Shown piece after piece: positions 11,936 to 14,572 of a stretch of DNA of 32,000 nucleotides. Each line of letters begins with the position of its first letter. Within the stretch, counting starts at the first letter, position 1. Under the pieces are notes generated by a model. The model searched no databases. It worked only from the letters and a program-made list of their open reading frames with translations, and had not been told where the DNA came from. The translations under genes were made by a program, and so were the position numbers. Origin of the DNA: Wallemia ichthyophaga EXF-994 (lineage: Eukaryota > Fungi > Basidiomycota); contig NW_008806283.1 in NCBI RefSeq assembly GCF_000400465.1, positions 330,001-362,000 on the forward strand, read 5' to 3'.

Positions 11936-12633
11936 TCAATACGTCCGCCACCCCTCACCATTAAAGTAACTTTTCTCAGGCACTGGTGCCGACGCTGTCG
12001 ACAAAGGCCAAAGCATGTCATCACCATCGACCTCAGTGGACTCCCGCTTGAGCTTCTTGCTAACGCTACGCGTCATTTTAATGTTTTTCCACTCGTTGCT
12101 GGCCTGCTTTGATATCTTGCTCTGATGGGTTGTGCTTCCATTGGCTCTAATGCGACAATCAGAAAACTGAAACACCGATAAATTTCTCACTCACTTCAAA
12201 TCTGCACTTTTCTTCCGTCTGTATTCTAGGAATGAATTCATTCTAGCATGCGTCAGCAACGTGCAACTGTGCGTTCACCAACTCACCTCGGCAGCGGAGA
12301 AGGAGATGGACACATCTCTGCAGAGAAATCTGCAGAGCACAAATATTCATACTCCGATGCCAAACCCCTGCATCTCTTCTTCGGTGGTTTATGTACGTTC
12401 AAGTCTAATGGTGGCTGCGTCCTTGGCGTGATACTCGGAGGTAGATGGAGTATCTCAGGTAGATCCATCGGCGTACTCATCCACTCATCACTGGGTATGC
12501 TGTTGAAGATAGTGTCTTCAGAGGTTCTGTAGACTGAGTGAGTCGTTGATAGTTGTATTGCTATCGAGCCGTCAGAGCGTTCCCTTTTCTGCTGGAAAAA
12601 CTCACGCAAGTGGTAAAACGATAGGGAGCTCAT
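11936..12633 (-). CDS. HMG-box-like transcription factor with a divergent or truncated box
   Basis: Introns 12286-12243 and 12194-12147 (both gtgagt..ctgac/ctgat..tag) give PLPRMNSFLEYRRKKSADLKANGSTTHQSKISKQASNEWKNI, matching HMG helices 1-2 (P-R-x-N-x-F, ISK..W). Confidence 0.65.
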
Positions 12634-12975: not shown

Positions 12976-13785
12976 TTAAAGCTGTAGAGCTCCCTTCAAA
13001 GCCTCATTCTCCAGCCTTACCAAGCGCAGCTCTTCTTCAAGCCCAGCGACACATTCAATGCGGCTAGTAAGATGGGCATTCTTCTCAACAAGTTGTTCAA
13101 CTTGCGACTCAAGATAAGACAACTCATTCCTCTTCCTTTCCCTAGATTTACGCGCAGCCAAAGTATTTTGTCTACGTTTTGATTCAATCGCATCCTGTAC
13201 GTCTGAAGGAACATCATCGACAGTGCCCCGTGATCTTTTCTTAGAGTTGCCTTCTACGCGTGATTCGAAAGCAGCAGGAACCTTCTTACGTGAAGTGGCA
13301 CTAGCTGACGAGTATTTACGGGGTTGAATTGGATCCGACATTCCGACCTTGTATCGCTTTGACTGGATGGTTGAAGAGCGTGATTTGTCACACGGAGGGG
13401 GTGAGACGGATGGTTTATTGTAAAGATCGTTCTGTTCAGAGGCTTCTTTGAGTAAGGACGAAAAACCATCGAATACGGAAGTGTCGATAGGATGTTCTGG
13501 TGGGTGTTTAACTGTTTCAGGGTCAATGCCCTCTGCACTCCCACCAAACAAGGGGAAGCCGCCCAACAAATCGTTAGTATCAGAGTGTAGGAGTTGAGGC
13601 GTGACAAGTTGTTGTTGAGGGGAGGAGGAAGATGAAGTAATTGAGAAAGGGCTGTTGGTTAGGCTTGGTGGTTGTTTGAATGAGCTAAAAAGCGCGTCAA
13701 AGTCGATCAAGTCATTCGATTGACTTGTGGCTCCGCTTTGAGCGACAGAGTGCTCATACTGAGTACTGAAATTGAGATCTGACAT
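12976..13785 (-). CDS. GCN4: bZIP activator of general amino-acid control (Gcn4/Cpc1)
   Basis: ATG 13785 MSDLNF; acidic LIDFDALF region; PRKYSSASATSRKKVP; basic region KRRQNTLAARKSRERK followed by a leucine zipper. Confidence 0.88.
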   Translation of the reverse strand: MSDLNFSTQYEHSVAQSGATSQSNDLIDFDALFSSFKQPPSLTNSPFSITSSSSSPQQQLVTPQLLHSDTNDLLGGFPLFGGSAEGIDPETVKHPPEHPIDTSVFDGFSSLLKEASEQNDLYNKPSVSPPPCDKSRSSTIQSKRYKVGMSDPIQPRKYSSASATSRKKVPAAFESRVEGNSKKRSRGTVDDVPSDVQDAIESKRRQNTLAARKSRERKRNELSYLESQVEQLVEKNAHLTSRIECVAGLEEELRLVRLENEALKGALQL

Positions 13786-13963
13786 AATTGTAATTGTGAT
13801 ATTTGTGTGATAAAATTCATCTTGTGTAAATTCTTGGTGAGACACATTGGTCTTTTATATTGTAAAGCTTAGTGATAGTCAAGGGGAAACATATTGAAAC
13901 TCTCTTAAATATAATTTGATTATTCAAATTATAAAATCTGGGTGCTTAAGTAATTTAGAACAT
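13707..13963 (-). promoter_or_regulatory. Three uORFs in the GCN4 leader: uORF1 13963-13955 (MF*), uORF2 13892-13869 (MFPLDYH*), uORF3 13847-13707 (46 aa, overlaps the main ORF out of frame)
   Basis: AUG and stop positions read directly on the minus strand; the arrangement matches GCN4/ATF4 delayed-reinitiation control. Confidence 0.8.
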
Positions 13964-13970
13964 TGTGATA

Positions 13971-14026
13971 CTGTGGTGAGTGGTGTGAGTGGATGGATTT
14001 GCCATGATTACGTTGGCTATACTTAC
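13971..14026 (-). other. Predicted 56-nt 5'-UTR intron of GCN4
   Basis: gtaagt donor at 14026, ctcac branch-like motifs, cag acceptor at 13971; size matches the other introns in the window. Confidence 0.6.
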
Positions 14027-14572
14027 AAATCAAAAGGCGGTAGGCGTTGTCGTTTTCGTTTGCGTTTATTGAGTTGATGAGAGTAGGGAGAAATCACTTT
14101 GAGAAAAAAATTCGAATATACGCGCATAAATTAAACTCAAAAATTCTATCTTGCATTTATAATTTGACCAATTTAGTATAGCCGTGAGCTGCTCTCCATG
14201 TTTCTCATTAACTTCTCCTCTGCAGTACTTCGGAAACCCGATGAAAATTTACTCTAAACCCTGATAAAAGGGAGATACATTGATTAAAAGCAGTTCTAAT
14301 GATGCCTATGTACTCTTATCTCGCTTACTCTTCATCTGACTTTGCCCACCTCTGCAAAGTGAAGCAAGTCACATGAGCATTCTCAAATGGACTAAAAGTT
14401 TGAAATTTATGCGCAGCACCAAACACACACCAACTCAAGCAATTCTCTCACTCAAATCTCCACTCTTGTCCTCGTATTTGCCCGCTTTCCTCCTTCATCC
14501 ATAACTTCCATCATCGATAAATTAATTTTGTGTTGTGCTTAAACCCTAAGATTCCAAGTATAAAAATATCTC

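What the first reader, a model, noticed from the sequence alone, without database searches (positions are those of the whole stretch)
13955..14026. Possible splicing switch on GCN4 uORF1: an intronic AUG in frame with the 2-codon uORF
Seen: the predicted leader intron (14026-13971) contains an ATG at 14005, exactly 14 codons upstream of and in frame with uORF1, with no stop between. Spliced mRNA has uORF1 = MF*. Intron-retained mRNA has MANPSTHTTHHSITMF* (16 aa, 3 His, 4 Thr). Knowledge: reinitiation falls as uORF length rises, and a short uORF1 is what makes GCN4 inducible. Inference: intron retention could convert a permissive uORF into a poorly reinitiating or His/Thr-sensitive one, coupling splicing to amino-acid control. 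I know of no description of this, but cannot search.
Basis: partly seen in the sequence, partly recalled or inferred. Interest (0 to 1): 0.7.

Follow-up and report, generated by a model that had tools for sequence, protein, structure and literature searches.

The report
Conserved leader intron before GCN4 uORF1
The halophilic fungus Wallemia ichthyophaga has a short intron, conserved across its relatives, just upstream of the first tiny upstream reading frame of its GCN4-like stress regulator. The in-frame start codon inside that intron looks incidental, not a conserved splicing switch.

Summary
The sequence is exactly as described. On the minus strand, GTAAGT (14026) to CAG (13971) bounds a 56-nt intron-like segment. 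An ATG at 14005 sits 14 codons upstream of, and in frame with, uORF1 (ATG TTC TAA, 13963-13955). The window is Wallemia ichthyophaga EXF-994, and the gene is a GCN4/CPC1-type bZIP.

An intron-like element of 45-56 nt ends 1-13 nt before the uORF1 AUG in all five Wallemiales lineages I could fetch. Its interior cannot be aligned between lineages. The chance of such an element at that spot is about 0.001 per lineage. So the leader intron is almost certainly real and old.

The splicing-switch idea is not supported by comparison:
- An open in-frame intronic AUG occurs only in W. ichthyophaga, its sister lineage, and one of two variants of a fifth lineage.
- W. hederae and W. mellicola carry an in-frame TAG in exon 2 that forbids the extension.
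- The extension peptide is not conserved, and intronic AUG counts match neutral expectation.

No RNA data were reachable, so retention is untested.

Verdict: a new member of a known kind (a 5'-leader intron whose retention would remodel uORFs, as in human ATF4 V1/V2). Interest is modest.

The parts
14104..14142 (-). Conserved promoter-like block (TTTTGAGTTTAATTTATGCGCGTATATTCGAATTTTTTT). It contains an ATG at 14127.
   Evidence: It aligns across four Wallemia lineages. The ATG is replaced by TAG in W. mellicola. Whether it is transcribed is unknown.
14027..14124 (-). Putative exon 1 / 5' UTR: a 98-nt C/A-rich stretch free of AUG, ending at the 5' splice site. The transcription start is not mapped.
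   Evidence: AUG-free runs of 98-180 nt precede the 5' splice site in all lineages. The probability of zero ATG in the last 100-110 nt in all five is about 0.003 by shuffling, treating the lineages as independent.
13971..14026 (-). Leader intron, 56 nt: GTAAGT...CAG. It has no CTRAY branch site, only two CTCAC copies (within 13992-13973).
   Evidence: GTRAGT...YTRAY...YAG elements of 45-54 nt end 1-13 nt before uORF1 in L002, L003, L004/L010/L036/L037 and L008/L031. The null probability is 0.001-0.0015 per lineage. The length fits the window's ORF-bridging introns of 44-57 nt and the 61-bp species mean (PMC3849046).
14003..14005 (-). Intronic AUG in context gtaatcAUGg (A at -3, G at +4).
   Evidence: It is kept in the variant L013 despite a C>T change at -2.
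13955..14005 (-). The 16-codon uORF (MANPSTHTTHHSITMF*). It exists only if the intron is retained and shares the uORF1 stop.
13955..13963 (-). uORF1: AUG UUC UAA (MF*), 7 nt downstream of the 3' splice site.
   Evidence: ATGTTCTAAAT is identical in four Wallemia lineages. The fifth lineage has ATGTCCTTCTAA.
13910..13934 (-). Conserved A/U-rich 10-bp hairpin between uORF1 and uORF2.
   Evidence: dG is -6.7 to -7.2 kcal/mol with z of -2.0 to -2.9 in four lineages. The fifth lineage has a different sequence forming a 9-bp stem at the same place, but its fold is not better than shuffles (-8.6 kcal/mol, z -1.3).
13869..13892 (-). uORF2: 7 codons, MFPLDYH*.
   Evidence: A 6-7-codon uORF is present in all lineages: MFYFDDH, MFSLDYL, MFYFDYL, MFYKND.
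13707..13847 (-). uORF3: 46 codons from AUG 13847, or 37 codons from the conserved AUG 13820. It overlaps the main AUG out of frame.
   Evidence: An overlapping uORF of 31-46 codons occurs in all five lineages. It resembles the basidiomycete uORFL (PMC5487733) and ATF4 uORF2.
12976..13785 (-). Main ORF: a 269-aa GCN4/CPC1-type bZIP.
   Evidence: The gene order Pcf11 - bZIP - SPX/EXS is conserved.

Best explanation
The segment 14026-13971 is a genuine, evolutionarily old spliceosomal intron in the 5' leader of the Wallemia GCN4/CPC1 orthologue. It is removed from the functional mRNA. The working leader then reads: an AUG-free exon 1, uORF1 (MF*), a small hairpin, uORF2 (7 codons), and uORF3 overlapping the main AUG. 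This is a delayed-reinitiation architecture of the GCN4/ATF4 type.

The AUG at 14005 is an incidental feature of fast-evolving intron sequence. Its His/Thr-rich frame is a by-product of the duplicated CCACTCAC tract near the 3' splice site.

If some unspliced RNA reaches ribosomes, the good-context AUG would be used and would produce a 16-codon uORF1. From yeast data, that should reinitiate poorly, making the isoform non-productive. I see this as the ordinary consequence of retaining a 5'-UTR intron, not a conserved regulatory device.

Shown here: the sequence anatomy, conservation of the splice signals and of the uORFs, and non-conservation of the AUG, its frame and its peptide. Inferred: that splicing actually occurs, where transcription starts, and the translational consequences.
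For: Organism and gene identity.

The intron is real:
- All five lineages carry an intron-like element ending 1-13 nt upstream of the uORF1 AUG.
- The interior cannot be aligned, while the exon 2 elements align.
- The chance of such an element at that spot is 0.001-0.0015 per lineage.
- The window has 13 full intron-like matches against 2.9 expected.
- The length fits local introns and the species mean of 61 bp (PMC3849046).

The region upstream is probably transcribed: the 98-180 nt before the 5' splice site are AUG-free in every lineage.

The intronic AUG looks incidental:
- Intronic ATG counts (1, 1, 2, 0, and 0 or 2) match the shuffle expectations of 0.25-1.4 per intron.
- The AUGs differ in frame and in consequence between lineages.
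- They are polymorphic among close relatives.
- An in-frame TAG in exon 2 blocks any extension in W. hederae and W. mellicola.
- The extension peptides are unrelated apart from the three residues (SIT) just before the uORF1 Met.
Against: No transcript evidence of any kind was obtained, so splicing and the transcription start are inferred.

The W. ichthyophaga intron lacks the CTRAY branch motif. That motif is present in the four other lineages and in about 10 of the 13 window introns I judged reliable. A weak branch site is typical of inefficiently spliced introns.

An open in-frame AUG in both W. ichthyophaga (null 0.063) and its sister lineage L002 (null 0.185) is nominally unlikely. The distance from that AUG to the uORF1 AUG differs between them by 9 nt, a multiple of three.

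Intron retention is the commonest alternative-splicing class in this species, where 730 genes (15%) show alternative splicing (PMC3849046).
Confidence: 0.6

Rival explanations
1. A lineage-specific splicing switch, which is the first reader's idea restricted to the W. ichthyophaga/L002 clade. Regulated retention of the leader intron would replace the 2-codon permissive uORF1 with a 13-16-codon poorly reinitiating uORF and so tune bZIP translation.
For: - An open in-frame AUG occurs in W. ichthyophaga (both variants) and in L002, with the frame kept despite a 9-nt length difference.
- The AUG context is strong: A at -3 and G at +4.
- The branch site in W. ichthyophaga is non-consensus.
- The last three extension codons are S-I-T in both lineages, and the three nucleotide differences between them are all synonymous (AGT/AGC, ATC/ATT, ACA/ACC; read). 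With only three differences, this is weak.
- Extending yeast uORF1 by up to 10 codons sharply reduces reinitiation (PMC5389480).
- Intron retention is common in this species (PMC3849046).
Against: - It is not conserved in W. hederae or W. mellicola, where an in-frame TAG in exon 2 blocks the extension.
- It is polymorphic in the fifth lineage.
- The intron-encoded part of the peptide is not conserved, and L002 has no His.
- By my arithmetic on the values, the probability that at least 2 of the 3 eligible lineages have such an AUG is about 0.05, and the feature was selected post hoc.
- There is no RNA evidence.
Confidence: 0.12
2. The intron has decayed in W. ichthyophaga and is poorly spliced or not spliced at all. 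The normal leader would then carry the 16-codon uORF1 constitutively.
For: This is the only lineage without a CTRAY/TTAAT branch motif; it has CTCAC twice instead. The intron is unusually G-poor and C/A-rich.
Against: GTAAGT, CAG and a typical 56-nt length are intact in both W. ichthyophaga variants. Non-CTRAY branch candidates (TTAAT, CTTAC, possibly CTCAC) occur in about 3 of 13 other introns in the window. The rest of the leader architecture, which presupposes a very short uORF1, is fully conserved.
Confidence: 0.08
3. There is no intron here. Transcription starts downstream of 14005, and the GT...AG is promoter or untranscribed DNA.
For: The transcription start is unmapped. In this window alone, a GTRAGT hexamer in a leader of a few hundred nt is not rare.
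Against: Complete splice-signal sets are kept at the same place in five lineages while the interior has diverged beyond alignment. AUG avoidance extends 98-180 nt upstream of the 5' splice site.
Confidence: 0.03

Closest known systems
GCN4 (S. cerevisiae), cpc-1 (N. crassa) and basidiomycete cpc-1 leaders (Ivanov et al. 2017, PMC5487733)
   Same: A bZIP regulator with a very short first uORF followed by an inhibitory uORF. As reported for some Basidiomycota, the long uORF overlaps the main ORF.
   Different: - uORF1 here is 2 codons, against 4-7 reported for other Basidiomycota.
- There is an extra conserved 7-codon uORF2 and a conserved hairpin.
- An in-frame stop lies 33-75 nt upstream of the main AUG, so the N-terminal extension from near-cognate start codons described in that paper cannot exist here.
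- In the searches I ran, I found no description of a leader intron directly upstream of uORF1 for these genes.
Human ATF4 transcript variants V1 and V2 (PMC8933703, which cites Chan et al. 2013)
   Same: A functional analogue of GCN4 in which an intron in the 5' leader is either spliced (V2, the canonical uORF1/uORF2 leader) or retained (V1). Retention lowers productive output. A weak splice signal is conserved there.
   Different: The ATF4 intron is about 600 nt. The retained form is nuclear-detained and unstable, and it does not act by extending uORF1. In ATF4 retention is shown experimentally; in Wallemia it is untested, and the weak signal (the branch site) is confined to one lineage.
Alternatively spliced 5'-leader introns in Cryptococcus genes with uORFs (Wallace et al. 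2020, PMC7049704, which cites Gonzalez-Hilarion et al. 2016 for intron-retention-dependent regulation in Cryptococcus)
   Same: Basidiomycete genes that combine conserved uORFs with alternatively spliced 5'-leader introns. Introns are short and intron retention is the dominant splicing variation.
   Different: Those cases rest on RNA-seq, TSS-seq and ribosome profiling, and none is described as extending a GCN4-type uORF1 in frame.

Membership tests
GCN4/CPC1-type bZIP under uORF-mediated translational control | C-terminal bZIP domain with a GCN4-like basic region | tested here: met
   Pfam bZIP_2 (E 1e-8) and bZIP_1. The four best PDB sequence matches are GCN4 chains (E 5e-6 to 1.4e-5).
GCN4/CPC1-type bZIP under uORF-mediated translational control | A very short 5'-proximal uORF plus a downstream inhibitory uORF | tested here: met
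   uORF1 (2-3 codons), uORF2 (6-7 codons) and an overlapping uORF3 (31-46 codons) are conserved in five lineages.
GCN4/CPC1-type bZIP under uORF-mediated translational control | Induction of main-ORF translation on eIF2-alpha phosphorylation or amino-acid starvation | not testable with these tools
   This needs reporters or ribosome profiling.
U2-type short fungal spliceosomal intron | 5' splice site GTRNGT and 3' splice site YAG, with length in the species' range | tested here: met
   GTAAGT...CAG, 56 nt. Window introns are 44-57 nt and the species mean is 61 bp (PMC3849046).
U2-type short fungal spliceosomal intron | Branch-site consensus CTRAY 5-25 nt upstream of the 3' splice site | tested here: not met
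   The window intron has only CTCAC, twice. The orthologous introns have CTAAC, CTAAT or TTAAT.
U2-type short fungal spliceosomal intron | Positional conservation of the splice signals with a free-evolving interior | tested here: met
   Seen in five lineages. The null probability is 0.001-0.0015 per lineage, and the interior cannot be aligned.
U2-type short fungal spliceosomal intron | Absence of the segment from mature mRNA | not testable with these tools
   Every fetched contig that reaches the site is genomic and contains the intron. The metagenome scan gave only chance hits.
Regulated intron-retention switch that remodels uORFs (ATF4 V1/V2-like) | Retention changes the set of uORFs | tested here: met
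   In silico, retention gives 16 codons instead of 2 in the window, 13 codons in L002, and a 47-codon uORF that swallows uORF1 in W. hederae.
Regulated intron-retention switch that remodels uORFs (ATF4 V1/V2-like) | Conservation of the retention-specific AUG and its frame | tested here: not met
   An open in-frame AUG occurs in only 2 lineages plus 1 of 2 variants of a third. An exonic TAG blocks it in 2 lineages.
Regulated intron-retention switch that remodels uORFs (ATF4 V1/V2-like) | A retained isoform exists and varies with conditions | not testable with these tools
   No RNA data were accessible. PMC3849046 reports intron retention genome-wide, but its main text gives no per-gene data.

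The most novel reading that the evidence does not exclude
In the W. ichthyophaga clade, a weakened branch site makes the conserved leader intron a regulated, retainable intron. Retention would place a strong-context AUG in frame with uORF1 and convert the 2-codon reinitiation-permissive uORF into a 13-16-codon non-permissive one. Splicing efficiency would then gate the GCN4-type amino-acid response in an obligate halophile, for example in response to salinity or starvation.
Probability: 0.1. Interest if true: 0.6.

Novelty: new member of a known kind. Interest (0 to 1): 0.3.

Why it matters
GCN4/ATF4 leaders are the textbook case of translational control by uORFs. If splicing set the length of uORF1, that would add a pre-translational input to the circuit and echo the ATF4 V1/V2 situation in a fungus.

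What the evidence supports is more modest but useful for annotation and comparative work. Wallemiomycetes carry a conserved leader intron immediately upstream of uORF1. They also have a three-uORF plus hairpin leader that differs from the basidiomycete pattern described so far. Gene models for this locus should include a spliced 5' UTR, and anyone studying this leader should use the spliced form as the reference.

Tried and rejected
1. I looked for transcript-derived contigs through exact-protein look-ups of the window protein and of cluster members P0002-P0005, P0016, P0021, P0022, P0025 and P0026. Every contig that reaches the intron site is genomic and contains the intron. Two short contigs (L007, L038) stop 116 nt upstream of the main AUG.

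All 15 hits were unrelated AT-rich chance matches.

3. I looked for deeper conservation in another basidiomycete (Mycena amicta bZIP, L035). It has no comparable short-uORF leader, so I dropped this.

4. I tested for autoregulatory GCN4-site motifs (TGASTCA) in the intergenic region. Only W. hederae has one, so there is no conservation.

5. Literature searches for a described leader intron or intron retention in GCN4, cpc-1 or cpcA found nothing specific.

6. I rejected the His/Thr-sensing peptide idea. The sister lineage's extension has no His and one Thr. The His and Thr codons come from the duplicated CCACTCAC tract.

Full report
**What the window is.** The bZIP protein encoded at 13785-12976 on the minus strand is found verbatim on scaffold KE007233.1 of assembly GCA_000400465.1. 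Near-identical members of its protein cluster are annotated as Wallemia ichthyophaga. This is the obligately halophilic basidiomycete sequenced by Zajc et al. 2013 (PMC3849046). The protein hits Pfam bZIP_2 and bZIP_1. Its best matches among all solved structures are the S. cerevisiae GCN4 bZIP chains (E 5e-6 to 1.4e-5). The gene sits head-to-head with a Pcf11-like CID gene and upstream of an SPX/EXS gene. That order is conserved in every related locus fetched. Calling it the GCN4/CPC1 orthologue is reasonable.

**Checking the observation.**
- GTAAGT begins at 14026 and CAG ends at 13971, giving 56 nt.
- An ATG lies at 14005 in the context gtaatcATGg.
- uORF1 (ATG TTC TAA) lies at 13963-13955.
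- The unspliced frame reads MANPSTHTTHHSITMF*; the spliced leader leaves MF*.

Taken alone, the intron call is weak, because GTRAGT hexamers are common: 48 in the window against about 30 expected. The segment also lacks the CTRAY branch motif and has only two CTCAC copies. With the intron's composition fixed, an open in-frame ATG appears in 6.3% of shuffles.

**Is the intron real?** I fetched orthologous loci from four further lineages:
- an unnamed sister lineage (L002, 74% protein identity);
- W. hederae (L003, 62%);
- W. mellicola (L004, L010, L036, L037; 55%);
- a more distant, AT-rich lineage known only from metagenomes (L008, L031; 43%, same gene order).

I also fetched a second W. ichthyophaga-like variant, L013.

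In every lineage a GTGAGT...CTAAC/CTAAT/TTAAT...YAG element of 45-54 nt ends 1-13 nt upstream of the uORF1 AUG. The interiors cannot be aligned, whereas uORF1, the following hairpin and uORF2 align well. In Markov-shuffled intergenic sequence, such an element ends within 15 nt of a given AUG with probability 0.001-0.0015 per lineage. The 56-nt length fits the ORF-bridging introns of this window (44-57 nt) and the published species mean of 61 bp (PMC3849046).

Upstream of the 5' splice site, every lineage has an AUG-free run of 98-180 nt. Zero ATG in the last 100-110 nt of all five has a shuffle probability of about 0.003, treating the lineages as independent. This suggests that the region is transcribed 5' UTR. 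I conclude that this is a genuine and old leader intron. What I could not obtain is direct RNA evidence.

**Is the intronic AUG a conserved device?** No. Retention would have these effects in each lineage:

| Lineage | Effect of retaining the intron |
|---|---|
| W. ichthyophaga (window and L013) | In-frame 16-codon uORF1 |
| L002 | In-frame 13-codon uORF1 (MPSNVVQNSITMF) |
| W. hederae | Two AUGs in the uORF2 frame, giving a 47-codon uORF that runs over uORF1 to the uORF2 stop |
| W. mellicola | Only an AUG straddling the 5' splice site, followed at once by UGA. One variant (L036) has an interior AUG that is closed by a TAG in exon 2 |
| Fifth lineage | L008 has two AUGs, one in frame (MVYRMSF). 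Its close relative L031 has none |

W. hederae and W. mellicola both carry an in-frame TAG between the 3' splice site and uORF1, so an extension is impossible there. Intronic ATG counts (1, 1, 2, 0, and 0 or 2) match the shuffle expectations of 0.25-1.4 per intron. That contrasts with the AUG-free exon 1. This is the pattern expected if ribosomes normally never see the intron.

The extension peptides share nothing except the three residues (SIT) just before the uORF1 Met. The His and Thr codons in W. ichthyophaga come from a duplicated CCACTCAC tract (13992-13973) next to the 3' splice site.

**What keeps the switch idea alive.**
- An open in-frame AUG in both W. ichthyophaga (null 0.063) and L002 (null 0.185) is nominally unlikely. 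My arithmetic on those values gives about 0.05 for at least two of the three eligible lineages. The feature was chosen post hoc, and the two lineages are sisters.
- The distance from that AUG to the uORF1 AUG differs between them by 9 nt, a multiple of three.
- The three codons before uORF1 differ only synonymously between the two (S-I-T in both).
- W. ichthyophaga alone has lost the consensus branch site. However, about 3 of the 13 window introns I judged reliable also lack CTRAY.
- Intron retention is the main alternative-splicing class in this species, where 730 genes (15%) show alternative splicing (PMC3849046).
- The mechanistic premise is sound. In yeast, lengthening GCN4 uORF1 by up to 10 codons dramatically reduces reinitiation, through eIF3 loss and displacement of 5' enhancer elements (PMC5389480).

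So a retained transcript would very probably be non-productive. What lacks support is that this is regulated or selected.

**Most likely mechanism.** The functional mRNA is spliced. Its leader then runs in this order:
1. a C/A-rich, AUG-free exon 1;
2. uORF1 (2 codons), 7 nt after the exon junction;
3. a conserved 10-bp A/U hairpin (about -7 kcal/mol);
4. uORF2 (7 codons);
5. uORF3 (37-46 codons), overlapping the main AUG out of frame.

This is a delayed-reinitiation layout. It is closest to the basidiomycete cpc-1 leaders with an overlapping long uORF (PMC5487733) and to ATF4. Any unspliced RNA would initiate at 14005 and largely fail to reinitiate. I treat that as ordinary splicing leakage (confidence 0.6). 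The rivals are a clade-specific regulated switch (0.12), a decayed and unspliced intron in W. ichthyophaga (0.08), and no intron at all (0.03).

**Comparison with what is known.** Retention of a 5'-leader intron that alters uORF-dependent output is established for human ATF4. There, V1 is retained and V2 spliced, a weak splice site is conserved, and retention lowers ATF4 protein (PMC8933703). Alternatively spliced leader introns in uORF-bearing genes are documented in Cryptococcus (PMC7049704). My literature searches found no description of a leader intron next to uORF1 in GCN4, cpc-1 or cpcA genes. The Wallemia intron is therefore a new member of a known kind, not a new mechanism.

**Verdict.** Interest is 0.3. 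Mapping the existing RNA-seq data to this locus would settle the open point cheaply.

Noticed in passing
window 13910-13934 (-): A conserved A/U-rich 10-bp hairpin (UUAUAAUUUG...CAARUUAUA) lies between uORF1 and uORF2, at about -7 kcal/mol in four Wallemia lineages. The distant fifth lineage has a different sequence (UUUUGAUC...GAUCAAAA) that forms a stem at the same place, although its fold is not better than shuffles. It may time scanning or reinitiation between the two uORFs.
   Followed up: partly
window 13869-13892 (-): uORF2 has 6-7 codons in every lineage, with a peptide-like pattern: MFPLDYH, MFYFDDH, MFSLDYL, MFYFDYL, MFYKND. I did not test whether this conservation is at the peptide or the nucleotide level.
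   Followed up: partly
window 13707-13847 (-): uORF3 overlaps the main AUG out of frame in all five lineages (31-46 codons), like ATF4 uORF2 or the basidiomycete uORFL. W. ichthyophaga has an extra upstream in-frame AUG (13847) in addition to the conserved one (13820).
   Followed up: partly
window 13855-13857 (-), 72 nt upstream of the main AUG: An in-frame stop lies 33-75 nt upstream of the main AUG in all lineages. The non-AUG-initiated N-terminal extension reported for other Basidiomycota and Pezizomycotina cpc-1 genes (PMC5487733) therefore cannot exist in Wallemia.
   Followed up: yes
window 14104-14142 (-), ATG at 14127: This is a conserved promoter-like block (TTTAATT...GCGCG...AAATTTTT). 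Its ATG is present in W. ichthyophaga, L002 and W. hederae but is TAG in W. mellicola. If it were transcribed, splicing would fuse it in frame to uORF1 in W. ichthyophaga, giving a 38-codon uORF. The transcription start therefore matters.
   Followed up: partly
L008 vs L031; L036 vs L004/L010/L037: Intronic AUGs come and go between closely related genomes (two against none, and one against none), while the splice signals stay fixed.
   Followed up: yes
L007 and L038, first base (116 nt upstream of the main AUG): Two independent short-read assemblies of W. mellicola-like genomes break at the same base, just 3' of the leader hairpin. This is probably an assembly break at the inverted repeat.
   Followed up: no
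L031-L034, about 770-1900 nt downstream of the bZIP stop: The distant fifth lineage has an HMG-box gene inserted between the bZIP gene and the SPX/EXS gene. Otherwise the gene order Pcf11 - bZIP - SPX/EXS is conserved.
   Followed up: no
window 12527-12605 (-): The first intron of the downstream SPX/EXS gene is ambiguous. The frame-preserving 79-nt version has only a CTCAC-type branch candidate, while a 45-nt version with a perfect CTCTGAC branch site would break the frame. This bears on whether CTCAC serves as a branch site in this species.
   Followed up: no
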